A stretch of DNA of 64,000 bases from Anolis carolinensis (taxonomy: Eukaryota): NCBI RefSeq assembly GCF_035594765.1, contig NC_085845.1:28328024-28392023 (forward strand), read 5' to 3'. The translations under genes and the position numbers were made by a program. The stretch's first letter is position 1. Every line of letters starts with the position of its first letter. Shown here in pieces: positions 44,997 to 63,797 of the stretch. The notes under the pieces were generated by a model. That model was given only the letters and a program-made list of their open reading frames with translations. It did not search any database and had not been told where the DNA came from.

Positions 44997-45316
44997 CAGG
45001 GGTCCCCAAACTTTTTAAACAGGGGGCCAGTTCACAATCCTTCGGACTGTTGGAGGGCCGGACNNNNNNNNNNNNNNNNNNNNNNNNNNNNNNNNNNNNN
45101 NNNNNNNNNNNNNNNNNNNNNNNNNNNNNNNNNNNNNNNNNNNNNNNNNNNNNNNNNNNNNNNNNNNNNNNNNNNNNNNNNNNNNNNNNNNNNNNNNNNN
45201 NNNNNGACTCCTTGGGCCATTGAGTCCAATCCCCTTCTGCCTTTGTGCACCGAAAGCACAAGCAAAGCACCCCTGACAGATGGCCACCCAGCCTCAATGT
45301 TAATAATAATAATAAC

Positions 45317-50424: not shown

Positions 50425-50650
50425 CTAACACCTCCCCAGGCAGGAAGCAGTCAAGCTTTGAAGCTGCAAGGCCATTAAATGCTAATCAAGCTGGCCAACT
50501 GCAACCTTCACACTTGCCTCAAAAGACAAGAGTTATTTCTCCCACCCAGGGCATTCCCCATTTGCCTAGTTTCCAACAGACTTCACAACCTCTGAGATGT
50601 GGATGAAACATCAGGAGAGAATGCTTCTGGAACATGGTCCAGGAAACCCA
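50425..50650 (+). mobile_element. Penelope 3'/pLTR fragment (deleted)
   Basis: Similar to the other copies; hammerhead stem II deleted. Confidence 0.8.
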
Positions 50651-50821
50651 AACCATTTCCTGATTGCTTTAATGCTGGTAAATTACTAAACAGTTTATGC
50701 AAATGCTTTATACAGTTGATGACTAATGCTCTGACCTTGCTGATTTAAACCCAAGAGATTGTATGGCTATTCTAGGCTTAATGGTGTTTATTATATTATT
50801 CTTTTTCATATAAACTTTCCT

Positions 50822-51260
50822 AGCCCTATGAGGACAAGCCCTATGAGGAGCGGCTTAAAGAGCTGGGCATGTTTAGCCTGCAGAAGAGAAGGCTGAGAGG
50901 AGACATGATAGCCATGTACAAATATGTGAAGGGAAGTCATAGGGAAGAGGGAGCAAGCTTGTTTTCTGCTGCCCTGCAGACTAGGACACGGAACAATGGC
51001 TTCAAACTACAGGAAAGGAGATTCCACCTGAACATCAGGAAGAACTTCCTCACTGTGAGAGCTGTTCGACAGTGGAACTCTCTCCCCGGGCCATGGTGGA
51101 GGCTCCTTCCTTGGAGGCTTTTAAGCAGAGGCTGGATGGCCATCTGTCGGGGGGTGCTTTGAATGCGATTTCCTGCTTCTTAGCAGGGGGTTGGACTAGA
51201 TGGCCCATGTGGTCTCTTCCAACTCTACTATTCTATGATTCTATGATTCTATGATTCTAT
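50822..51260 (+). mobile_element. CR1 LINE 3' end (young) in LEF1 intron 1
   Basis: Nearly identical to 19086-19437; (TTCTATGA)n tail. Confidence 0.93.
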
Positions 51261-51544
51261 GCCATGAAAATTGATTTACATTCAATACTATGAATATCGA
51301 TGTAGAAATAAGTCTCACTGCATTAAACACGAATTACTTCCAGGTAACTTGCTTGAGGACTGCAGTATAAAGGAGAAGGGACTTACAATATATTGTAGAT
51401 TGGTGAGGCATCATGTCCACACCAAAAATAAAATAAAAATTATTATGCATTACACAGGATAAATGCAACAAACATAACAAGCTACAAGAACTAATAGCTA
51501 ACATGCTTGTTTACCAAATAGTGCAGATTATTCTAATATGTATT

Positions 51545-51903
51545 GGGTTTCTGTGAGTTTTCCAGGCTGCATGGTCATGTTCCAGAAGCATTCTCTCCTG
51601 ATGTTTCACCCACATCTATGTCAGGTACCCTCAGTGGTTGTGAAGTCTGTTGGAAACTAGGCAAGTGGGGTTTATATATTTGTGGAAAGTCCAGATTGGG
51701 AGAAATAACTCTTGTTTATTTGGTATTAGACTCCATAGATATATAAACCCCACTTCCCTAGTTTCCAACATACCACACAACCTCTGAGGATGCCTGCCAC
51801 AGATGTAGGAAAAATATCAGGAGAGAATGCTTCTGGAAGATGACCATATAGCCTGGAAAACTCACAGCAACCCAGTGATTCTGGCCATGAAAGCCTTCGA
51901 CAA
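51545..51903. mobile_element. Short Penelope insertion with inverted pLTRs
   Basis: TSD CTAATATGTATT (51533-51544) / CTAATACGTATT (51904-51915); ends ...GCCATGAAAGCCTTCGACAA. Confidence 0.88.
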
Positions 51904-52561
51904 CTAATACGTATTTATTGACAATAAAGTTAACCAGCTACTACTTTCAAATCAATCTGTGCAAGTTCCTGCGAATCGTGAGACAGGCTAGAAACAATGA
52001 AAATAACACAAAGCCAAGGCAAACAATGAACAACTTAAACTGAAGCAAGTTTGTAACTCAATCCCATCTCTGAACAAAGTCCTGCTGACTTTCCATATGC
52101 TTTATTCTCAGGACTGCCGCCAGGATTGTAAATGACACTGATTTTGAGTGGAATTTATTTGAAGTGTGTCTGCTTGAGACCATTCTGCTGCCTGTTTTTG
52201 TTACAGCTCCACTTATTTTCTTAATATATTGCTGATATCAGAATCCGGCAGCAGCAAGAGAAGAAGGTGTTTCTCCTGATATACAAGCAGCAGCTCCCAG
52301 TTCCCATGGTCAAGCCACTGAAGCCAGAGAAGTAAGGGTTCTAGAGTTTCTACAGATACCTTTCATGCATCTTTTCCCCCTGAAACATGCTCTGATTTAC
52401 TGAAATTCAGGCTTGGGTAATACATGCGGCAGGCTCATCCTGTTTCCTTTGGCAGCAACATGAAAACATCAGAGAACTGCCTACTTAAGGCTACAGTGCC
52501 TTTCTCTGTACTATACTGCCAAATTTGATCCCTGAAATTTTCTGAAATAACTTTTTTTGGC

Positions 52562-53693
52562 TGTTGAACGCTTTTATGGCCAGAATCACAGGGTTGATGT
52601 GAGTTTTCCGAGCTGTATGGCCATGTTCCAGAAGCATTATCTCCTGACATTTCGCCTGCATCTATGGCAGGCATCCTCAGAGGTTGTGAGGTCTATTGGA
52701 AACTAGGCAAGTGAGGTTTATATATCTGTGGAATGATGTCCAGGGTGGGAGAAAGAACTCTTGTCTGTTTCAGGCAGGTGTGGATGTTTCCATTGGCCAC
52801 CCTGATCAGCATTGAATAGCCTTTCAGCTTCAAGGTCTGGCTGCTCCCTGCCTGGGGGAATCCTTTGTTGGGAGGTGTTAGCTGGCCCTGATTGATTCGT
52901 GTCTGGAATTACCGTTTTCAGAATGCTGGGAGCCCCGGTGGCGAAGTGCGTTAAAGCGCTGAGCTGCTGAACTTGCAGACCGAAAGGTCCCAGGTTCAAA
53001 CCCCGGAAGCAGAGTGAGCCCCCGCTGTTAGCTCTAGCTCCTGCCAACCTAGCAGTTCGAAAACATGCCAATGTGAGTAGATCAATATGTACTGCTCCGG
53101 CAGGAAGGTAAGGACGCTCCATGCAGTCATGCCAGCCACATGACCTTGGAGGTGTCTATGGACAACGCCGGCTCTTCGGCTTAGAAATGGAGATGAGCAC
53201 CAACTCCCAGAGTCAGACATGACTGGACTTAACGTCAGGGGAAACCTTTACATATTCCTGTTTTCAGAGTGTTGTTCTTTATTTACTCTCCTGATTTTAG
53301 AGTTTTTAAAAATACTGGTAGCAAAATCTGGCTACCAGTATTTAAAGAACTCTAAAATCAGGAGAGTAAATAAAGGAAAACACTCTGAAAACAGGAATTC
53401 CAGACATGAAACAGTCAGGGCTAGCTAACAAAGGATTCCCCCAGGAAGGAAACAGCCAGGATTTAAAGCTACAAGGCTATTCAATGCTATTCAAGGTGTC
53501 CAATGGAAACATCCACACCTGCCTGAAAGTTCTTTCTCCCACCCTGAATCTTCCACAGATATATAAACCCTACTTGACTAGTTTCCAACAGACCTCACAA
53601 CCTCTGGGAATGCTTGCCATAAATGCAGGCGAAACCTCAGGAGATAATGCTTCTTGAACATGGCCATACAGCCCGGGAAACTCACAGCAACCC
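52562..53693. mobile_element. Inverted Penelope pair with nested Sauria SINE (52929-53251, +)
   Basis: pLTR/3' sequence on minus then plus strand, with a fold-back junction at ~53323-53330. Confidence 0.88.
52643..52683 (-). ncRNA. Near-intact hammerhead motif, LEF1-sense
   Basis: Core intact except GAAATGTC (C>T in the palindromic stem III). Confidence 0.6.
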
Positions 53694-53714
53694 AGACACT
53701 ATGGCTGCTTTTGA

Positions 53715-54010
53715 ACCTCTGCGTTCGCCCCGAGTCACAACTCCAAAAAGGAAGTGAGAGGAGGAAGGGGGAGAGCCTCCGCGGCGGCCAACAGCTTCCA
53801 GCTCCGATCCCTCCTCCTTCTCTTCCTCCTCCTCTTCTTCTCCCAGCGCTGCTCATTCATGGGGAACCGCGGCGGATCGGATTTCAAAGCGCCGCCGTCC
53901 AAAAACAGCCGCCCGGCCGGCGGTTCCCGGTTTCCATGCCCCGGCACACACGCAGGCTGCCTCGGCCCTGCTCGCCTGGGAGAGCCTGCCCTTCCGAAAG
54001 GCCCCTCTTG
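53715..54010. promoter_or_regulatory. CpG-rich unique segment in LEF1 intron 1
   Basis: High CpG density between TE blocks; TCF motif TTCAAAG at 53883-53889; ETS-like GGAAGT at ~53750. Confidence 0.55.
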
Positions 54011-54204
54011 TGAAATATCCATTGGGTTTTGTGGTGCCGTGGTTTGAGCGTTAAGACCGTGGCTGTACTGCCATCAGAGAATGAAGGCAGATAGACAGCT
54101 CTTTTCACTGCCATGGTTCAGTGCTATGGAACCCTAGGCATGGGTAAACTTGAGCCTCCAGGTTCTTTGGATTTCAACTCCCACAATTCCTAACAGCCTA
54201 CCGG

Positions 54205-54990
54205 CTGGGCTGCTTTGAGTTTTCAGGGCTGCATGGCCATGTTCCAGAAGCATGCTTTCCTGACGTTTCGCCCGCATCAATGGCAGGCATCCTCAGAGGT
54301 TGTGAGATCTTTTGGAAACTAAGCAAGTAGGGTTTATATATCTCTGGAAGATTCAGGGTGGGAGAAAGAACTCTTTTCTGTTAAAAGCAAGTGTGAATGT
54401 TTCAATTGGCCATCTTGATTAGCATTGAATAGCCTTTCAGTTTCAAGGCCTGGGTGCTTCCTGGCTGAGGGAATCCTTTGTTGGGAGCTGTTACCTGCCC
54501 TGACTGTTTCATGACTGGAATTCCCCTGTCTTATGACTGTTCTTTACTGTCCTGATTTTAGAATCTTTTAATACTAGTAGCCAGATTTTATTCATTTTCA
54601 TGGTTTCCTTCTTCTTTCTCTTGAAATTGTCCACATTCTTGTGGATTTCAGTGGATTCTCTGTGTAGTCTGTGAGTGAGAGTGGTCCAGCATTGCTGTGT
54701 TCTCAAATAATATGCTGTGTCCAGGTTGGTTCATCAAGTGCTCTGCTATGGCTGACTTTTCTGGTTGAATCAGCCTGCAGTGTTTGGGCATTGCTGCGTT
54801 TGCTGGTCCCTATGGAGACTTGTCCACAGCTACACAGTATACGGTAGACTCCTGCAGAGGTGAGAGGATCCCTCTTGTCCTTTGCTGAATGTAGTATTTG
54901 TTGGATTTTCTTAGTGAGTCTGCAGATAGTTTGTAGGTTGTGTTTCTTCATCAGCTTCCCTATGTGGTCAATGGTTGCCTTCATGTATGG
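54205..54990 (-). mobile_element. Penelope-like element 3' part (degenerate GIY-YIG endonuclease + pLTR)
   Basis: ORF remnants ...DKRDPLTSAGVYRILCSCGQVSIGT... and ...LHRESTEIHKNVDNFKR... match the Penelope/Poseidon GIY-YIG domain; followed by pLTR. Confidence 0.9.
54259..54299 (-). ncRNA. Minimal hammerhead ribozyme motif, LEF1-sense, intron 1
   Basis: CCT CTGAGGA T GCCTGC CATTGAT GCGGGC GAAACGTC AGG; core intact. Confidence 0.78.
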
Positions 54991-55004
54991 TAAGATCCTC
55001 TTAC

Positions 55005-55885
55005 CTCAGTAGGAATCTACCGTATACCATGCAGCTGTGGACAAGTCTACATAGGGACCAGCAAACATGAATCAAGGAATATGAAAAGCACTACAGACTA
55101 ACTCAACTGGAGAAGTCAGACATAGCAGAGCGCTTGATGAACCAACCTGGACACAACATATTATTTGAGAACACAGAAATGCTGGACCACTCTCACAACC
55201 ATCCTGTCAGACTACACAGAGAAGCCATTCAAATCCACAAGCATGTGGACAACTTCAACAGAATGGAGGGAACCATGAAAATGAACACCATCTGGCTACT
55301 AGTATTTTAGAAAATCTAAAACCAGGACAGTAAATAAAGAACAAGAGTCAGAAAACAGGCCCGGGCTGTGGCTCAGGCTGGTGAGTAGCCAACTGCAGCC
55401 AGCTGCAACAAATCACTCTGGCCAAAAGGTCATGAGTTCGAGGCCAGCTTGTCTCTGTCTTTGTTCTATGTTAAGGCATTGAATGTTTGCCTTATATGTG
55501 TAATGTGATCCGCCCTGAGTCCCCTTCGGGGTGAGAAGGGCAAAATATAAATACTGTAAATAAATAAATAAACAGGAGAATCCCAGACATGAAACAATCA
55601 GGGCCAGCTAACACCTCCCAACAAAGGATTCCCTCAGGCAGGAAGCAGCCAGGCTTTGAAACTGCAAGGCTTTTCAATGCTAACCAAAGTGATTAATTGC
55701 CACATTTACACTTGCCTCCAACAGACATGAGTTATTTTTCTCACCTTGGACCTTTTACAAATAAAGTATGTAAACTTCATTTGCTTAGTTCCCAACAAAC
55801 CTCACAACATCTGAGGTTGCCTGCCATAGATGTGAGCGAAACGTCAGCAGAGAAATGGCCATACAGCCCGGAAAACTCATCATAG
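55005..55885 (+). mobile_element. Penelope-like element, inverted partner of 54205-54990, interrupted by a SINE
   Basis: Reverse complement of the same GIY-YIG/pLTR sequence. Confidence 0.88.
55359..55571 (+). mobile_element. L2-tailed tRNA SINE (Anolis SINE2-like)
   Basis: Tail GTGATCCGCCCTGAGTCCCCTTCGGGGTGAGAAGGG...(AAAT)n; AAACAGG direct repeat on the flanks. Confidence 0.82.
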
Positions 55886-56015
55886 CAATTGTTAGGGATT
55901 GTGGGAGTTGGAAGTCCAAAAAATCTGGAGGGATGGCCGAAGTTTGCCCTTGCCGTAACTTTAACTAACTTACTCTCGCTGGTGAATAACTACTCCTTCC
56001 AGAAAGTTTCTTCCA

Positions 56016-56142
56016 GGGTTGTTGCATGTTTTCCGGGCTGTATGGCCATGTTCTAGAAGTATTATCTCCTGACGTTTCGCCCACATCTATGGCAGGCATC
56101 CTCAGAGGTTGTGAGGTATGGAGAAACTCAGCAAGGAAGGTG
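56016..56142 (-). mobile_element. Mini Penelope pLTR insertion (~127 bp)
   Basis: Flanked by GAAAGTTTCTTCCA (56002-56015) and GAAAGTTTGTTCCA (56143-56156), a 13/14 TSD. Confidence 0.8.
56068..56108 (-). ncRNA. Minimal type I hammerhead ribozyme motif (Penelope pLTR), LEF1-sense, intron 1
   Basis: Minus strand CCT CTGAGGA T GCCTGC CATAGAT GTGGGC GAAAC GTC AGG: CUGANGA and GAAA cores, stem II, palindromic ACGU stem III, GUC triplet, CCU/AGG stem I. Confidence 0.8.
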
Positions 56143-56237
56143 GAAAGTTTGTTCCACCTTCCCAGCTGCAGTGCCACCTCCCGCTGCCCCACACCAATGG
56201 CCTACTCTCCTCTTCCTCTTCTTCTTCTTCTTCTTAC

Positions 56238-56465
56238 CTCGTGCCCATTGCTGCTAGGGATGGTTTCCGACTCGTTGACCAGCGAGGACTTGATGTCGGC
56301 CAAGTCTCCCTCTTCCTCCGGGTGGCTGATCTCGGCGAAGATCTTCTCCTTCTGGGGGTCGCCCTCGTCTTTGAAAGGGATCATCTCGTCGGTGGCGCAG
56401 AGCTCGGGGTCGCCTCCTCCTCCTCCGCCGCCGCCTCCTCCTCCTCCTCCCGAGAGCTGAGGCAT
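56238..56465 (-). CDS. LEF1: LEF1 coding exon 1 (beta-catenin-binding domain), 76 codons
   Basis: Translates MPQLS(G)13DPELCATDEMIPFKDEGDPQKEKIFAEISHPEEEGDLADIKSSLVNESETIPSSNGHE, the LEF1 N-terminus. ATG context GCCACGATGC. Donor GAG|GTAAGA at 56237, phase 0. Confidence 0.98.
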
Positions 56466-56833
56466 CGTGGCTGCTGCCTCTGGAGAGCCTGGAGGAGAGA
56501 GGGAAGGAAGGAAGAGAAACAACAGGAAGGATGGAAGTTAGAAGTCTTGGAGAGGAGGCTCCCTAATCTAATCAACCCACGCAAATACACAAAGAGTTAC
56601 CCTCCTTCCATCCCTACGCCACTCACCACCAAACACCTGGAGAAAGGGGAGAAGAGAAGGGGGAAGGACTCTCCCTCTGCTTGGTCTGCCGGCTTTTAAA
56701 AGAGAGGAAGGAAGGAAGGAAGGAAGGAAGGAAGGAATACAGACCCCCTTCCCTTCCCCAGTTTCTGTAGTGTCTGCCGCAAGAAGTCTGGACAAGTTTG
56801 CGCCTCTGCCCGGTTTGGCTTCTCTGCGTCACT
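56466..56833 (-). promoter_or_regulatory. LEF1 proximal 5' UTR / CpG-island segment
   Basis: Unique GC-rich sequence immediately upstream of the ATG; contains a (GGAA)n tract at ~56706-56737. Confidence 0.65.
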
Positions 56834-58009
56834 GTGTTGTTGGAGGCTTTCGTGGCCGGAATCACTAGGTTGCTGTGAGTTTTCCGGGCTGTGTGGCTAT
56901 GTTCCAGAAACATTCCCTCCTGACGTTTCGCCCACATCTATGGCAGGCATCCTCAGAGGTTGTGGGTTCTGTTAGAAACTCAGAAAGTGGGGTTTATATA
57001 TATGTGGAAGGCCCAGGTCTTGTCTGTTTGAGGCAAGTGTGAATGTTGCTATTTTTTTTTCGTATCAGGAGCAACCGGAGTTGCTTCTGGAGTGAGAGAA
57101 TTGGCCGTCAGCAAGGACGTTGCCCAGGGGACGCCCAGATGTTTTTGATGTTTTTACCATCCTTGTGGGAGGCTTCTCTCATGTCCCCGCATGGAGCTGG
57201 AGCAGATAGAGGGAGCTCATCCTCATTCTCCCCGGGTGGGATTCGAACCTGGCAGCCTTCAGGTCAGCAACCCAGCCTTCAAGTCACGAGGCTTTAATCC
57301 CCTAGGCCATCGGAGGCTCCAATGTTGTTATTGATCAGCATTGAATAGCCTTTCAGCTTCAAAGCGTGGCTGCTTCCTGCCTGGGGGAATCCTTTGTTGG
57401 GAGGTGATTCGCTGTCCCTGATTGTTTATTATCTGGAATTCCTCTGTTTTTGAGCGTTGTTCTTTATTTACTGTCCTCTGCAGGAGTCTACCTTATACCA
57501 TACAGGTGTGGACAAGTCTACATACATAGGGACCACCAACCACAGCATTACCCTAACAGGAATCAATGAATATGAAAGGCACTGCAGACTAACTCAACCA
57601 GAGAAAGCCATTAGCAGAGCACTTGATGAGTTGAGAACTATTTTGTATCTGGGCTCTGCTAGTCTATGTCAGCCCAATTTACCACCATAGGCCACACAAC
57701 CAACCAAACAACTTTGTGAACTCCAACTAGCTTCAGTAAATTAATGTGAATGTTTGTTCAGAATTTATGCCATTATGTAATTTTTTGTCTGACTATGTTG
57801 GTTTAATTTATTGATGTTAGGTTTAATTCACTGATGTTAGGTTTAATTTGATGTTAGGGTTTAATTACTGATTTCATATGTGGTTGTTTTTTTCTGGGAT
57901 GCTATGTAGGTATTTGTCAGTTTTAGTGAAGGCTGTTAATGTTTGCCCTTGAATTTGGAATCTGCTCTGAGTCTCTTTGGGGAGAATAAGCAGAACAGAA
58001 ATAAAGTTC

Positions 58010-58062
<53 letters not shown>

Positions 58063-59858
58063 GTGATGAACCAACCTGGACACAGTATATTATTGGAGAA
58101 CACAGAAATGCTGGACCACTCTAACAACCACCATGTCAGCCTACACAGATAAGCCATTGAAATCCACAAGCATGTGGACAATTTCAACAGAAAGGAGGAA
58201 ACCATAAAAATGAACAAAATCTGGCTACCAGTATTTTTAAAAATCCTCTAAAATCAGGACAGTAAATAAAGACCAACACTAAGAAAACAGGGGAATTCCA
58301 GACAGGAAACAATCAGGGCCAGCTAATCACCTCCCAACAAAGGATTCCCCCAGGTAGGAAGCAGCCAAGCTTTGAAGCTACAAGGCTATTCAATGCTAAT
58401 CAAGGTGATCAATTACAACATTCACACTTGCTACAAAAAAAAAAAAAAGGTGGGTTGCTGTGAGCTTTCCGGGCTGTATGGCCATGCTGCAGAAGCATTC
58501 TCTCTTGAGGTTTCACTCACATCTATGGCAGGCATCCTCAGAAGTTGTGAGGTTTGGTGGAAACTAGGTAAGTGGGGTTTATATATCTGTGGAAGGTCCA
58601 GGGTGGGAGAAAGAACTCTTGTCTATTGGAGGTAAGCATGAATGTTGCAATTAATCAACTTGGTTAGCATTGAATGGCCTTGCAGCTTCAAGGCCAGGCT
58701 GATTCCTGCCTGGGATAATCCTTTGTTGCAAGGTGTTCAGGGTGAATCTACACTAAAATGAATGAGGATTGGCACCACTTTAACTGTCATGGAATCATGG
58801 GATCTGTAGTTTGGTGAGGCACCAGCACTCTTTGGCAGAGAAGGGAATTCCAGACAAGAAACTATCAGGGCCAGCTAACACCTCCCAGCAAAGGATTTCC
58901 CCAGGCAGTAAACAACCAGACCTTCAAACTGAAAGGCTATTCAATGCTAATCAAGGTGATCAATTGCAACATTCACACTTGCCTCAAACAGACAAGACTT
59001 CTTTCTCCCACCTTGGACCTACTCTAAGGTAAAGGTAAGTCCAGTCATGTCTGACTCTGGGGGTTGGTGCTCATCTCAATTTCTAAGCCGAAGAGCAGGC
59101 GTTGTCCGTAGACACCTCCAAGGTCATATGGCCGGTATAACTGCATGGAGCGCCGGGACCTTCCCTCCGGAGAGGTACCTATTGATCTACTCACATTGGC
59201 ATGTTTTCGAACTGCTAGGTTGGCAGAAGCTGGAGCTAACAGCGGCCTCTCACGTCGCTCCTGGGGTTTGAACCTGGGACCTTTCGGTCCGCAAGTTCAG
59301 CAGCTCAGTGCTTTAACACACTTCGCCACCGGGGCTCCAATTAGGGTTTTTATAGAACGTAGTCTTGTGGGATCTTTAGGCTCTTTCTCCCACCCTGGGC
59401 ATTCCACAGATACAATAGAGTCTCACATATCCAACATAAACGGGCCGGCAGAATGTTGGATAAGCGAATATGTTGGATAATAAGGAGAGATTAAGAAAAA
59501 GCCTATTAAACATCAAAATAGGTTATGATTTTACAAATTAAGCACCAAAACATCATGTTATACAACAAATTTGACAGAAAAAGTAGTTCATTACACATTA
59601 ATGCTATGTAGTAATTACTGCATTCACGAATTTAGCACCAAAATATCACAATGTATTGAAAACATTGACTACAAAAATGCATTGGATAATCCAGAACCTT
59701 GGATAAGTGAGACTCTACTGTATATAAACCCCACTTGCCTAGTTCCCAACAAACCTCACAACCTCTGAGGATGCCTGCCTTAGATGTGGGCGGAAGGTGA
59801 GGAGAGAATGCTTCTGGAACCTCCCCATACAGCCCGGAAAACTCACAGCAACCCAATA
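56834..59858. mobile_element. ~3 kb nested composite: Penelope with inverted pLTR ends plus nested SINEs, L2 tail, MITEs
   Basis: Inverted pLTR termini; GCGTCACT at 56826-56833 and 59859-59866. Nested: SINE 57053-57320, L2-like tail/(AAT)n ~57700-58062, Sauria SINE 59027-59338, mariner MITE 59413-59720. Confidence 0.85.
56919..56959 (-). ncRNA. Minimal type I hammerhead ribozyme motif, LEF1-sense, ~450 nt upstream of ATG
   Basis: Same 41-nt intact motif as 56068-56108. Confidence 0.8.
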
Positions 59859-59859
59859 G

Positions 59860-60930
59860 CGTCACTTTTGTTTTGTTTTTTCCAAAACATAAACACCCGC
59901 TGTCTTTCTTTTTTTTCTCTTCTTCCGCTTGGGATCGTCTTTTTAAAAATAGAAATAAAAAAATCATGCAGGTCAAGAGAGTAAGATTCCCACAAAGGAA
60001 AAAGAGCTATTTTGGGGGAGTCTGGAGGGATGTTGACAGGGCAGAGTGGAGAAAGAAGGGAGAAGGAAGGGGAAATGCCACAGACAGAGACTTCACCGAG
60101 GGAAGGGGAAATGCCAGAGTGAAAGAGAGAGGAGAAGAGGAAAGGGAGAAGAAGGGAAGCCGCTCTCTCGCACACTCGTTCCCCTCCACGGAGCTCCCCA
60201 GCCACGCACGCCTCCCCAATCCTCTCCCCTTCCCAAACCCACGCACCGGGCCTCTGCCTTTGTCCCCGGGACCGGGGAGTGCTGGTCTCCCCCTTCCGAA
60301 AGGTCTCTCCCTCCTCTTCCTCGCTGCCGTCGCCTCCGGAGAGAAAAAGGGGCGACTCTGGGGGTTGGGGTCCGCCAGGAGGGCTGCGTGGAGACCCCGA
60401 AGCCCCTTGAGCGAGACCCCGAAACTTCTCCCCTGGAAGAAGAAGAAGAAAAAGAGTCCAAGGTTGACTAAGTCCTCAGGAGAAAGACTCCGTCCGTGGG
60501 GTTCTTCTTTCGTGGTCCAAACAATCCTCGGGAATGCGAAGGGGGAAAAGAGTCGCCTCGCTGCGTGCGACCCACGGTCTCGCGTGGAGCCTGCTCCAAA
60601 AGGCAGTGGTTTCTCTCTCTCTGCCTCTCTCTCTCTCTCCTCCTCTGTCTCCCTCCGTAGTGGAACTTTAACATTCCCTCCTCCTCCTCCCACTCCCCTT
60701 TCCCTCCCTCCTCCCCCTTTTCCTCTCTCTCTCGCTCTGTTGAAAGGGTGGGGGCGGGAGGAAGAAGATGAAAGGGAAGCCGCCGCTTTGATTGACAGCG
60801 CATTGATAGACGCTCGGGAGAGAGGGAGAGAAAAAGGAAATGTAGCCATCCCGAGGAGGAGGGGAGGTGGTGGTGGTAGTGGAAAAGGCGGGGGGGGGGG
60901 GTGGACTCACAACAACCTCAACCCAGCTTA
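59860..60930 (-). promoter_or_regulatory. CpG/GC-rich segment, probable LEF1 promoter and distal 5' UTR
   Basis: Non-repeat, CpG-dense, with GA/CT tracts, a GC box (GGGGCGGG ~60750) and a TCF/LEF motif CTTTGAT at 60786-60792. TSS not determinable from sequence. Confidence 0.65.
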
Positions 60931-61020
60931 GGAAGCAGCGAACTGGGAAAGGGATAGGATGGATCTCTCTCTTTTGAAAAATTATTATATCTATGTACCC
61001 AAAGTTTTTTTTCCCCACCA

Positions 61021-61447
61021 CCCCCTTACCATGGGAAATGAAGATCATAAAGCAGCCTCGGCTACTGAGTTCCACATCAGGAAAGGTGCAAGCTCAGGGT
61101 TAGGAAGCAAGAAATGTACCTGGGAAAACAAGAAAATATGCCAAGAAGTCCCTCTGAAAACAAAACAAAAACATAAATGGTATTGTGTTGTCGAACACCC
61201 TGAACCTTCCACAGATATTTAAACCCCCCTTGCCTAGTTCCCCCTTACCATGGGAAATGAAGATCATAAAGCAGCCTCAGCTACTGAGTTCCACATCAGG
61301 AAAGGTGTAAACTCAGGGTCAGGAAGCAAGAAATGTACCTAGGAAAACAAGAAAGTAAGCCAAGAAGTCCCTCTGAAAACAAAACAAAAACATAAATGGC
61401 ATTGTGTTGTCGAACACCCTGAACCTTCCACAGATATTTAAACCCCA
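61021..61447 (+). repeat. ~219-bp tandem duplication upstream of the presumed promoter
   Basis: CCCCCTTACCATGGGAAATGAAGATC... starts at 61021 and 61240; few mismatches. Confidence 0.92.
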
Positions 61448-61480
61448 CTTTTGCCTAGTAGTTTCCAACAGACCTCACAA

Positions 61481-61521
61481 CCTCTGAGGATGCCTGCCAT
61501 AGATGCAGGCGAAACGTCAGG
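61481..61521 (+). ncRNA. Minimal hammerhead ribozyme motif
   Basis: CCT CTGAGGA T GCCTGC CATAGAT GCAGGC GAAACGTC AGG; perfect stem II. Confidence 0.8.
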
Positions 61522-61678
61522 AAAGAATGCTTCTGGAACATGGCCATACCGCCCGGAAAACTCACAGCAACCCATACATTGCATTGTTTTTGTGTCCCGT
61601 TGAAGGCTTTCATGGCCGGAATCATTGGGTTGCTGTGAGTTTTCCGGGCTATATGGCCATGTTCCAGAAGCATTATCT

Positions 61679-61719
61679 CCTGACGTTTCGCCTGCATCTG
61701 TGGCAGGCATCCTCAGAGG
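61679..61719 (-). ncRNA. Minimal hammerhead ribozyme motif
   Basis: Intact core, inverted relative to the 61481 copy. Confidence 0.8.
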
Positions 61720-62562
61720 TTGTGAGGTCGGTTGGAAACTAGGCAAGTGGGGTTTATATATCTGTGGAAGGTCCACGGTGGGAGAAAGAGGCAGGTGTGA
61801 ATGTTGCAGTTGACCAGCTTGATTAGCATTGAATGGCCTTTGCAGTTTCAAAGCCTGGCTGCTTCCTATCTGGAGGAATCCTTTGTTGGGAGGTGTTAGC
61901 TGGCCCTGATTGTTTCCTGTCTGGAATTTCCCTGTCTTCTGATTGTTGTTTTCTGAGTGTTCTTGATGAACCAACCTGGAAACAGCCTATTATTATAGAA
62001 CATAGAAATGCTGGACCACTCTCACAACCACAATGTCAGACTACACAGAAAAGCCCTTGAAAGCCACAAGCATATGGGCAGTGTTAGCAGAAAGAAGGAA
62101 ACCATGAAAATGAACAAAACGTGGCGACCAGTATTAAAAACATCTTTAAAATCAGGACAGTAAATAAAGAACACCACTCTGTAAACAGGGGAATTCCAGA
62201 CATGAATCGATCAGGGCCAGCTAACACCTCCCAACAAAGGATTCCTCCAGGCAGGGAGCAGCGAGATCTTGACGCTGAAAGGCTATTCAATACTAATCAA
62301 GGTGGTCAACTGCAGCATTCACACCTGTCTCAAACAGACAAGAGTTCTTTCTCCTACCCTGGACTTTCCAGATATTTAAACCCCTCTTGCCTAGTTTCCA
62401 ACAGACTTCACAATCTTTGAGGATGCCTGCCATAGATATGGGCGAAACGTCAGGAGAGAATGCTTGTGGAACAGCCCGGAAAACTCACAGCAACCCTGAA
62501 TTGTTTGTAATGTTGTGAGTCGTTTTAAGAGAGAAAAGCGGATATCATCATCATCATCATTA

Positions 62563-62620
<58 letters not shown>

Positions 62621-63597
62621 GGACCCACTACCACCATATCCCCCCGATTAGAGCCTCATCGCTTTCAGTATCCTCATCACCAATTCTCCTGACATCGTTT
62701 ATATAGATATTTTTATTATTATTGTTATGATCTGAGATGGGTTGAGGGCTTTTCTTTCAAAAGCTCCGAGGGTGGGAAGGGAATTGCTCTTTTCAAAGGG
62801 GTGGAGGTTTCTAATTCACTCTCCCCTTCCCCAAGGAAGCCTCTCCGGAGAGGGCAAATAATAGTTATCTGAACATCTTCAGACAAATCTGGAACAAGGA
62901 TGTTTTTCTAGGGCTGCTTTGTTAAGCCTTCCCCTTTTTGGAGAAGGAGGGGGAGCGCATATATTTCAAATTGTTTGGTGGCTGGAAATGGAGGGTGTGG
63001 GGAGAGGGAGAGAAGGCTCATGTGGGTGTTTTTGTTTGTTTATATTTACAGTTTTAGAAAAAGATACACAGAGAAAGAGAGGAAGGGAGGGGAAAGGCGT
63101 CGTTACGAAATGGGAAGGCAGGGAGAGAGGAAAAGGGATCAGAAATGAGCAGGCAAAATAGGGTTAGCAGCAGGCAGGTATCATAAAGGACCCCTGGATG
63201 CTTACTTGGAAGGTAAATCCAGAGAGAGAGAAACCATTCAAGGTCTTTCTGTGTACATCTTATGTGGCAATATGTCACATTGAATTGAATGGTATGGTCA
63301 CTTCAACAAGTCATAGAGTCGGGCTGTGTCTTCTTTTCAAAACAAATATCCTACCGATAGTCTTTTCCTATTGTAAATAAACCTTTTGTGATTTTTAAGA
63401 TTAGACTGTGCATCTTTGCTTGCCTAAACTCTGAATTCTTTACAGCCACATCACACGCTCTGCTGGCTCATGAGCTGAATGCTCAACTTTTAGTATCCTG
63501 TTTTATTTTTGGATGCTCTGCTATATTTTAGGGTAGCTTTCCCAAACAAAAAGGGTGATTAACTGAAACATTAATGCTAGCTTCCAACTGACAAAAG

Positions 63598-63797
63598 ACT
63601 CTTGTCACACCCTGGACTCTCCACAGATATATATTTTTTCCTTTCCTTGCCTAGTTTATCCATGCCTCACAACCTCTGAGGATGCCTGCCATAGATGTGG
63701 GCGAAACGTCAGGAGAGAATACTTTTGGAACATGGTCACACAGCCCGAAAGACATACAACAACCCTGTGATCCCGGCCATGAAAGCCTTCGACAACC
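63598..63797 (+). mobile_element. Penelope pLTR fragment
   Basis: Ends CCGGCCATGAAAGCCTTCGACAAC. Confidence 0.85.
63673..63713 (+). ncRNA. Minimal hammerhead ribozyme motif
   Basis: Intact core inside pLTR fragment 63598-63797. Confidence 0.8.

What the first reader, a model, noticed from the sequence alone, without database searches (positions are those of the whole stretch)
56068..56959. LEF1 coding exon 1 is bracketed by two intact, same-sense hammerhead ribozyme motifs
Seen: two identical 41-nt motifs on the LEF1 sense strand (CCU CUGAGGA U GCCUGC-CAUAGAU-GUGGGC GAAAC GUC AGG). One lies ~450 nt upstream of the ATG, the other ~130 nt into intron 1. Established: Penelope pLTRs carry minimal type I hammerheads whose palindromic stem III (here ACGU) cannot close as a monomer, and which are proposed to cleave as dimers of tandem copies. 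Inference: if transcription starts upstream of 56959, the two copies could pair in cis and cut after GUC at 56922/56921 and 56071/56070. That would excise an ~851-nt RNA holding the whole beta-catenin-binding exon. It would be a TE-derived ribozyme switch able to attenuate full-length LEF1 relative to intron-2-initiated dN-LEF1, and could yield a linear or circular by-product.
Basis: partly seen in the sequence, partly recalled or inferred. Interest (0 to 1): 0.88.

Follow-up and report, generated by a model that had tools for sequence, protein, structure and literature searches.

The report
Penelope hammerhead copies flank LEF1 exon
The two identical hammerhead-ribozyme motifs around the first coding exon of the lizard LEF1 gene are real, but they are the standard end-pieces of two separate copies of a very common jumping gene (Penelope/Poseidon type), and nothing indicates that they cut the LEF1 RNA.

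Summary
Observation confirmed. Identical 41-nt motifs lie at 56959-56919 and 56108-56068 on the LEF1 sense strand, with predicted cuts 851 nt apart.

They are the published hammerhead of the Anolis Penelope-like element Poseidon_Ac. The 41-mer equals the junction of that consensus's end and start. Both copies are 5'-truncated insertions that end at the element's two published reverse-transcription start sites.

The window holds 17 such copies, 15 with a recognisable motif and 6 intact. This scan has 18 hammerhead/Penelope intron notes on other DNA of the same genome; the two follow-ups shown called theirs ordinary.

RNA-like contigs of a close relative suggest a non-coding first exon near 60545-60247, spliced to 56488.

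Cleavage is unsupported:
- Published assays found this hammerhead inactive without the element's own protein.
- The same paper found no RNA-seq read ends at its cut site.
- Folding disfavours the cis dimer by about 30 kcal/mol.
- Each copy has an antisense partner in the same intron that would sequester it.
- No signal of selection on the motifs was found.

Verdict: ordinary transposon debris. The ribozyme switch is not excluded but unlikely (about 3%).

The parts
56919..56959 (-). Upstream minimal hammerhead motif (copy U). Predicted cut after C at 56922.
   Evidence: The CUGAGGA and GAAA boxes, the ACGU palindrome and C17 are intact. Helix II has 6 of 6 pairs and helix I 3 of 3.
56068..56108 (-). 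Downstream minimal hammerhead motif (copy D). Predicted cut after C at 56071.
   Evidence: Identical to copy U over all 41 nt.
56834..57053 (-). 5'-truncated Penelope-like (Poseidon-type) insertion that carries copy U. It ends 118 nt after the element's ATG (56951).
   Evidence: I compared it by eye with the Poseidon_Ac consensus. The end coincides with the published distal RT start site at +111-118.
56015..56135 (-). 5'-truncated, tail-less Penelope-like insertion that carries copy D. It ends about 85 nt after the element's ATG (56100).
   Evidence: The end coincides with the proximal RT start, which is the start of the 34-nt 'tail' at nt 85-119.
56238..56488 (-). LEF1 first coding exon (ATG 56465-56463), encoding the beta-catenin-binding domain. 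Inferred to be exon 2.
   Evidence: Searches identify it as LEF1. The acceptor (a polypyrimidine tract followed by CAG|G) and the donor GAG|GTAAGA come. RNA-like contig record 8 stops at this exon's end.
60247..60545 (-). Inferred non-coding exon 1 of LEF1, inside a CpG-rich patch. Its 5' limit is not defined.
   Evidence: X13 record 15 lies on 60246-60545 with 67 further letters that do not lie on the adjacent DNA. X13 depth is zero on 59908-60241 and 56568-56734; donor CCG|GTGCGT at 60247|60246, and CpG observed/expected of 0.64-0.82.
56489..60246 (-). Inferred intron 1 (3,758 nt). It holds copy U and the 3-kb transposon nest.
54259..54299 (-). Third intact same-sense hammerhead, in the intron downstream of the exon. 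It belongs to a longer PLE fragment (about 54205-55010) with frameshifted endonuclease-region ORF pieces.
   Evidence: The ORF pieces resemble the PAc protein printed.
55695..55879 (+). Antisense PLE copy in the same intron as copy D. In the RNA it is complementary to D.
   Evidence: 56108-56069 pair with 55808-55847 at a probability of about 1; duplex energy -155 kcal/mol.
59721..59858 (+). Antisense PLE copy at the far border of the nest, in the same intron as copy U. It shares an 8-bp target-site duplication with U.
   Evidence: duplex with U -215 kcal/mol. AGTGACGC occurs at 59866-59859 and at 56833-56826.

Best explanation
The two motifs are the built-in hammerheads of two independent, 5'-truncated insertions of Penelope-like retroelements of the Poseidon_Ac kind. 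They landed in the introns on either side of the first coding exon of LEF1.

In this family, reverse transcription starts 85-118 nt inside the ORF and usually aborts early. Most genomic copies are therefore 120-230-bp end-pieces spanning the pLTR/ORF junction, which is exactly where the hammerhead sits.

The motifs are identical because the hammerhead is conserved in the master elements of different subfamilies. The host has not preserved it.

Both copies are transcribed passively within the LEF1 pre-mRNA and removed with the introns. They most likely do nothing to LEF1.

What is shown: identity, anatomy, abundance and lack of a selection signal. What is inferred: intronic position and co-transcription, from contigs of a relative. 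What rests on published assays and folding, not on any measurement at this locus: lack of cleavage.
For: (1) The 41-mer equals the last 9 nt plus the first 32 nt of the Repbase Poseidon_Ac consensus printed in PMC11167929. The cut site lies 26 nt after the element's ATG, as that paper states.

(2) Copy U ends at +118 and copy D at about +85 from that ATG. These are the two published RT initiation sites.

(3) The window has 17 copies on both strands. Fifteen lie in 50.5-63.8 kb, 15 have a recognisable motif and 6 are intact. The scan holds 18 notes on such motifs in introns of other genes of this genome.

(4) Over the 17 copies the motif is no better kept than its flanks, at 8.4% against 9.7% mismatch. 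Taking private substitutions as the decay rate, the chance of 0 changes in 41 nt is 0.09 for U and 0.35 for D.

(5) The flanks of U and D are only 78% alike, and each resembles different other copies. They are separate subfamilies and separate events.

(6) With six intact motifs dropped at random in the cluster, the exon is bracketed by same-sense ones 64% of the time.

(7) The PAc hammerhead is inactive without PAc protein, and anole RNA-seq shows no read ends at the cut site. Minimal PLE hammerheads cut weakly even as dimers.

(8) Cis-dimer pairs have probability 1e-8 or less, and forcing them costs about 30 kcal/mol. The dimeric hammerhead secondary structure scores -17.7 kcal/mol against -32.2 for the two monomer folds. 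Antisense partner copies give duplexes of -155 to -215 kcal/mol.
Against: - Both copies keep all 41 nt, including two CpGs. Their joint probability under the private-substitution rate is about 0.03, and a placement within 500 nt on both sides has probability 0.009 under the local density. Both figures are post hoc.
- Both copies seem to be co-transcribed with LEF1, so the substrate for the proposed reaction would exist.
- The PAc hammerhead does cleave when its protein is present, and the element is described as apparently active. Cleavage in some cells therefore cannot be excluded.
- Nearest-neighbour folding ignores tertiary contacts, proteins and co-transcriptional kinetics.
- No raw RNA reads could be laid, so RNA ends at this locus were not examined.
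Confidence: 0.85

Rival explanations
1. In the LEF1 pre-mRNA the two copies pair in cis into a double hammerhead and cut at both GUC sites. This releases an 851-nt piece that holds the beta-catenin-binding exon and lowers full-length LEF1.
For: - Both motifs are intact and same-sense.
- Both probably lie in one primary transcript.
- Dimeric action is the published proposal for minimal PLE hammerheads.
- The required pairs are nested and geometrically possible.
Against: - There is no cleavage without PAc protein and no read ends at the site in anole RNA-seq.
- Activity of engineered dimers is low, and mostly seen at non-physiological Mg2+.
- Pair probabilities are 1e-8 or less, and forcing the dimer costs about +30 kcal/mol.
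- The active fold is 14.5 kcal/mol worse than two inactive monomer folds.
- D is captured by an antisense copy transcribed 220 nt later, and U's antisense partner is transcribed before U.
- A third intact sense copy at 54259-54299 makes the pairing non-specific.
- Three intact sense copies in an essential developmental gene argue against efficient cutting.
Confidence: 0.03
2. Protein-assisted cleavage at single sites. In cells that express the element's RT-endonuclease protein, the protein binds the tail region of intronic copies and helps any intact sense hammerhead to cut. Host pre-mRNAs, LEF1 among them, would be damaged as a side effect.
For: - PAc protein switches on cleavage of an RNA with one motif in vitro, independently of its endonuclease.
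- Copy U keeps the full tail up to +118, where the protein is proposed to bind.
- The element is described as apparently active.
Against: - No read ends were found at the cut site in transcriptome data covering all copies.
- Copy D lacks the tail.
- Sense and antisense copies are balanced inside the LEF1 transcription unit, 7 against 6, and the 3 intact ones there are all sense. This gives no hint of selection against sense copies.
Confidence: 0.04
3. The copies matter as inverted repeats rather than as ribozymes. Sense and antisense PLE copies in the two flanking introns pair across the exon and promote back-splicing of the 251-nt exon, or form long double-stranded RNA that is edited or slows splicing.
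For: Across-exon pairs are predicted to be as stable as within-intron pairs. U with 55695-55879 gives -205 kcal/mol and D with 59721-59853 gives -169 kcal/mol. From general knowledge, flanking inverted repeats are the known drivers of exon circularisation in animals.
Against: - Each sense copy has an antisense partner in its own intron. That partner is closer (for D) or transcribed earlier (for U), which favours within-intron pairing.
- No read evidence for a back-splice was obtainable.
Confidence: 0.05
4. The pLTR pieces have been co-opted as promoter or enhancer sequence for LEF1.
For: - The pLTR is thought to hold the element's promoter.
- The copies are crowded around the two CpG-rich patches.
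Against: - The RNA-like run shows no unique-sequence coverage between 56568 and 56734, and its upstream exon lies beyond the nest.
- The copies are truncated, and their orientations are mixed.
Confidence: 0.03

Closest known systems
PAc hammerhead of the Poseidon_Ac Penelope-like element of Anolis carolinensis (PMC11167929)
   Same: - The 41 nt are identical to the consensus end-to-start junction.
[quoted passage not shown]
- The copies end at the published RT start sites.
   Different: - These are short truncated copies of two subfamilies whose flanks are about 10-15% from the consensus, not active tandem elements.
- They sit in host introns, 851 nt apart, separated by unique host sequence.
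Minimal type-I hammerheads of Penelope-like elements (min-HHR; Cervera and de la Pena 2014, PMC4209133)
   Same: - The catalytic boxes are present.
- There is an extra unpaired base between A9 and G10.1.
- The G10.1-C11.1 pair and a long helix II are present.
- There is no helix III loop, positions 15.2-16.2 are palindromic, and helix I is short.
   Different: Helix I is only 3 bp here, against 4-5 bp described for the Schistosoma families. Nothing else differs.
Intronic self-cleaving ribozymes that act on their host mRNA (CPEB3 HDV-like ribozyme, PMC10919898; amniote intronic hammerheads HH9/HH10, as cited in PMC7761336)
   Different: Those ribozymes are single, fold and cut as monomers, and are conserved across species as single-copy sequence. 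The motifs here are high-copy transposon parts, inactive as protein-free monomers by published assay, and show no sign of host conservation.
Animal non-LTR retrozymes (PLE-derived tandem hammerhead repeats that give circular RNAs; PMC7761336, bioRxiv 10.64898/2026.07.22.740005)
   Same: Two same-sense type-I hammerheads could in principle release the RNA between them. The relation to pLTRs is the same.
   Different: Retrozymes are head-to-tail repeats of one unit. Here the two motifs belong to different subfamilies, and the sequence between them is host intron plus an exon.

Membership tests
PLE minimal type-I hammerhead (min-HHR) | Conserved core: C3 U4 G5 A6 N7 G8 A9, G12 A13 A14, and H17 at the cleavage site | tested here: met
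   CUGAGGA, GAAA and C17 are present in both copies.
PLE minimal type-I hammerhead (min-HHR) | Unpaired nucleotide between A9 and G10.1, a G10.1-C11.1 pair, and a long helix II | tested here: met
   The bulged U is at 56949 and 56098. Helix II is GCCUGC/GUGGGC, 6 pairs of which 2 are wobble. In other window copies the variant GCAGGC turns both wobbles into Watson-Crick pairs.
PLE minimal type-I hammerhead (min-HHR) | No helix III loop; palindromic 15.1-16.1 segment that can only pair with a second copy | tested here: met
   ACGU lies directly between GAA and C17.
PLE minimal type-I hammerhead (min-HHR) | Self-cleavage | not testable with these tools
   Published data only. The PAc motif cuts only with PAc protein, and Schistosoma dimers cut weakly.
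Poseidon_Ac-type Penelope-like element insertion | Sequence spans the junction of the pLTR end and the ORF start of the consensus | tested here: met
   The consensus is printed, and I compared it by eye. The 41-mer is exact. The flanks are recognisably homologous but diverged.
Poseidon_Ac-type Penelope-like element insertion | 3' end at the internal RT initiation sites (about +85, or +111-118 with the 'tail') | tested here: met
   U ends at +118 and D at about +85.
Poseidon_Ac-type Penelope-like element insertion | RT and GIY-YIG endonuclease ORF | tested here: not met
   U and D are too short to hold any ORF. The neighbouring copy at about 54205-55010 has frameshifted pieces that resemble the PAc endonuclease region, but Pfam gave no hit for them. 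This is as expected for truncated copies.
Canonical type-I hammerhead as modelled in Rfam | A match to an Rfam hammerhead covariance model | tested here: not met
   There is no hammerhead hit at gathering score in the whole window, nor at E up to 10 in 55800-57300. This fits the missing helix III.
Non-LTR retrozyme | Head-to-tail tandem repeats of one unit, each with a hammerhead | tested here: not met
   The copies are 851 nt apart, with unique host sequence and an exon between them. Their flanks are 78% alike and belong to different subfamilies.
Host-domesticated intronic ribozyme (CPEB3 or HH9/HH10 type) | The motif is conserved beyond its neutral flanks, or across species at the orthologous site | tested here: inconclusive
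   Within the window there is no excess conservation. Orthologous loci of other lizards were not available. Three DNA-like runs of the same organism do carry both copies.

The most novel reading that the evidence does not exclude
In cells where the Penelope-like element's protein or some host chaperone is present, the intact sense hammerheads in the introns flanking the beta-catenin-binding exon cut the LEF1 pre-mRNA faster than it is spliced. That would make a transposon ribozyme a brake on full-length LEF1 and a source of an exon-bearing linear or circular RNA.
Probability: 0.03. Interest if true: 0.75.

Novelty: already known. Interest (0 to 1): 0.13.

Why it matters
If the switch were real, it would be the first case of a transposon-borne hammerhead pair regulating a developmental transcription factor by cutting out an exon.

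As it stands, the value is mainly in clearing the ground.
- It ties the motif to a published, biochemically studied element of this very lizard.
- It shows how the short hammerhead-bearing copies arise.
- It gives a probable 5' gene structure for lizard LEF1.
- It names a test that could settle whether any of the many such intronic motifs are active: read ends at the cut sites, and a genome-wide comparison of intact against decayed sense copies in introns.

Tried and rejected
- **Rfam.** No hammerhead family matched, at gathering score over the whole window or at E up to 10 locally. The only local matches were sub-threshold miRNA-like hits on a hairpin and on low-complexity sequence. I dismissed them.

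- **Sequencing runs.** The search returned only assembled contigs, none on record as RNA. Laid on 55900-60900, three runs behave like DNA and one like RNA. Contigs cannot show RNA ends, so the decisive question of ends at the cut sites stayed open.
  - It skipped repeats at 56202-56243, 56402-56523, 56696-56746 and two further places.

- **Pfam.** The endonuclease-like ORF pieces of the neighbouring longer copy gave nothing usable.

- **Selection on the motif.** Mismatch to the column majority made U and D look anomalous, with 0 of 41 against 10-15% in the flanks. This turned out to be subfamily difference; with private substitutions the contrast disappears. The column majority was used only inside the scripts for counting and was neither printed nor kept.

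- **Folding of copy U.** The prediction for U's local fold changes with the length of RNA folded. Helix II has probability 0.76 and about 0.01, so I draw nothing from it.

The coding exon was searched alone, by reference.
  - The N runs at 29240-29467 and 45064-45205 were left untouched.
  - No comparison with human sequence was made.
Full report
**1.

On the minus strand, the same 41-nt string occurs at 56959-56919 and at 56108-56068. None is expected in shuffled sequence.

Read as a hammerhead, each copy has these parts:
- CCU, the 5' strand of helix I
- CUGAGGA, the first catalytic box
- a bulged U
- GCCUGC / 7-nt loop / GUGGGC, a 6-pair helix II
- GAA, then ACGU, then C17
- AGG, the 3' strand of helix I

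The exon between the copies starts with ATG at 56465 and ends at 56238. It encodes the N-terminal beta-catenin-binding domain (Pfam PF08347, E = 2e-27). It is closest to LEF1 among solved structures (3OUW chain B, 3.5e-34, against about 1e-10 for TCF3 and TCF7L2). Further LEF1-like exon peptides lie near 50150-50085 and 48600-48470.

**2. What the motif is**

The paper PMC11167929 studies the Penelope-like element Poseidon_Ac (PAc) of the green anole and prints its Repbase consensus.
- The last 9 nt of that consensus plus its first 32 nt give exactly the 41-mer found here.

The motif also meets every sequence feature that Cervera and de la Pena list for minimal PLE hammerheads:
- the catalytic boxes
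- the extra base between A9 and G10.1
- the G10.1-C11.1 pair and a long helix II
- no helix III loop
- a palindromic 15.1-16.1 segment

No Rfam hammerhead model matches, as expected for a motif without helix III.

The same paper shows that reverse transcription starts inside the RNA, 111-118 nt into the ORF. A second start lies at the beginning of a 34-nt 'tail' spanning nt 85-119.
- Copy U (56834-57053) ends at +118.
- Copy D (about 56015-56135) ends at about +85.

Both are therefore typical 5'-truncated insertions, one with the tail and one without.

The flanks of U and D are only 78% alike (62 of 79). Each has its best flank matches among different other copies. They are separate insertions from different subfamilies that share the conserved hammerhead.

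**3. Abundance and chance**

- The window holds 17 copies of the repeat on both strands, 15 of them within 50.5-63.8 kb.
- Fifteen have a recognisable motif.
- Six are fully intact: 54259(-), 56068(-), 56919(-), 61481(+), 61679(-) and 63673(+).
- Broken copies mostly carry changes at the motif's two CpGs.

This scan already holds 18 notes on Penelope hammerheads in introns of other genes of this genome. The two follow-ups shown in that listing judged theirs ordinary.

With six intact motifs placed at random in the cluster, the exon is bracketed by same-sense ones in 64% of trials. Both lie within 500 nt in 0.9% of trials. The close spacing is mildly unusual for one chosen exon. It is a post-hoc pick in a genome full of such copies.

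I found no signal that the host preserves the motifs.
- Over all copies the motif differs from the column majority as often as the flanks do, 8.4% against 9.7%.
- With private substitutions as the decay rate, zero changes in 41 nt has probability 0.09 for U and 0.35 for D.

**4. Transcription**

All runs offered were assembled contigs.

Three runs of the same organism (X1, X2, X15) behave like DNA.
- Their contigs run unspliced from intron into exon (56113-401).
- Their contigs cross both borders of the transposon nest (56747-56880 and 59830-60900).
- Both insertions are therefore present in those samples.

Run X13, from a closely related organism, behaves like RNA.
- One 628-nt contig lies only on 56244-56401, and 429 further letters are not on the intron.
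- One 367-nt contig lies on 60246-60545, with 67 letters that do not continue on the adjacent DNA.
- Depth is zero over the unique stretches 56568-56734 and 59908-60241.

On the minus strand a good donor (CCG|GTGCGT) sits at 60247|60246. A strong acceptor, a long pyrimidine tract followed by CAG|G, sits at 56489|56488.

I infer a non-coding exon 1 (at least 60545-60247, inside a CpG-rich patch), a 3,758-nt intron 1 and a coding exon 2 (56488-56238). The 67 missing letters would fall in the Gly-codon repeat that the read tool skipped, which also explains why both contigs break there.

If this is right, both hammerhead copies are intronic and lie in one primary transcript. This is an inference from contigs of a relative, not a measured transcription start.

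**5. Would they cut?**

Published evidence is negative.
- The PAc hammerhead shows no cleavage without PAc protein.
- Anole RNA-seq shows no reads beginning or ending at the cut site and no dip in coverage there.
- Minimal PLE hammerheads of Schistosoma are inactive as single motifs. As engineered dimers or trimers they cut weakly, mostly at non-physiological Mg2+.

Nearest-neighbour folding points the same way.
- In the 991-nt RNA from 57010 to 56020, the pairs needed for the cis dimer have probabilities of 1e-8 or less.
- Forcing those pairs costs about 30 kcal/mol.
- For 55-nt pieces, the dimeric hammerhead secondary structure scores -17.7 kcal/mol, against -32.2 for the two monomer folds. 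Those monomer folds pair the CUGA box with UCAG around the cleavage site.

Antisense copies compete for both motifs.
- Once the antisense copy at 55695-55879 is included, D's whole motif pairs with it at probability about 1.
- U has an antisense partner at 59721-59858 that is transcribed before it.
- Predicted duplex energies are -155 to -215 kcal/mol.

These energy models ignore tertiary contacts, proteins and kinetics, so they lower the odds of the switch rather than exclude it.

One further argument is indirect. Three intact sense copies sit inside the transcription unit of an essential developmental gene, and sense and antisense copies are balanced there at 7 to 6. That would be unexpected if sense copies cut efficiently.

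**6. Comparison and novelty**

The motif and its carrier are already described for this very species (PMC11167929, PMC4209133).
- It resembles a retrozyme only in having two same-sense hammerheads. It lacks the tandem unit.
- No paper in the library links LEF1 with these motifs.
- In Xenopus, PLE-derived hammerhead repeats are common in introns, at about 43%, though somewhat depleted there.

A more conventional way for these copies to affect the exon would be as inverted repeats across it, which favours back-splicing. That idea is equally untested.

**7. Verdict and limits**

These are ordinary transposon copies. The proposed function is unsupported and unlikely.

Limits:
- There were no raw RNA reads.
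- No other lizard genomes were available.
- The consensus was compared by eye only.
- The gene model is inferred from contigs of a relative.

Noticed in passing
window 56826-59866: A 3-kb nest of transposons is bounded by inverted Penelope end-pieces: 59721-59858 on the plus strand, and copy U at 56834-57053 on the minus strand. An exact 8-bp duplication, AGTGACGC, lies at 59866-59859 and 56833-56826. By my gene model the nest sits inside intron 1 rather than in the mature leader.
   Followed up: partly
window 50425-63797: Fifteen of the 17 Penelope copies, and all six intact hammerheads, lie in the 13 kb around the two CpG-rich patches of LEF1. The other 50 kb hold one overlapping inverted pair at 15578-15748. 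Broken motifs mostly show CpG-to-TpG or CpG-to-CpA changes, so low methylation near the CpG island might help the local copies stay intact.
   Followed up: partly
window 56127-56170: A near-perfect hairpin with arms GGAAGGTGGAA and TTCCACCTTCC lies directly 5' of copy D. It gives sub-threshold miRNA-like Rfam hits (mir-2985, 30 bits against a gathering score of 68). Its 3' arm overlaps the truncated 5' end of the element, so it may be a short inverted duplication made at insertion.
   Followed up: no
window 15578-15748, 51546-51904, 61418-61807: Penelope end-pieces recur as back-to-back inverted pairs, separated by less than 40 bp or overlapping. The nest borders have the same arrangement. It looks like a regular product of this element's insertion mechanism.
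   Followed up: no
window 54205-55010: A longer same-sense Penelope fragment lies in the intron downstream of the coding exon. It has frameshifted ORF pieces that resemble the C-terminal GIY-YIG region of the published PAc protein, and it ends in an intact hammerhead. Pfam did not recognise the pieces.
   Followed up: partly
window 56405-56445: The LEF1 N-terminus carries a run of 13 glycines encoded by a GGA/GGC repeat. Contigs of all runs break there, and the read tool skipped it.
   Followed up: no
window 60247-60545 and 56489: There is a probable non-coding first exon of LEF1 inside a CpG-rich patch (GC 0.56-0.66 and CpG observed/expected 0.64-0.82 over 60150-60750). It appears to be spliced to an acceptor 23 nt upstream of the ATG. 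This is inferred from RNA-like contigs of a closely related organism.
   Followed up: partly
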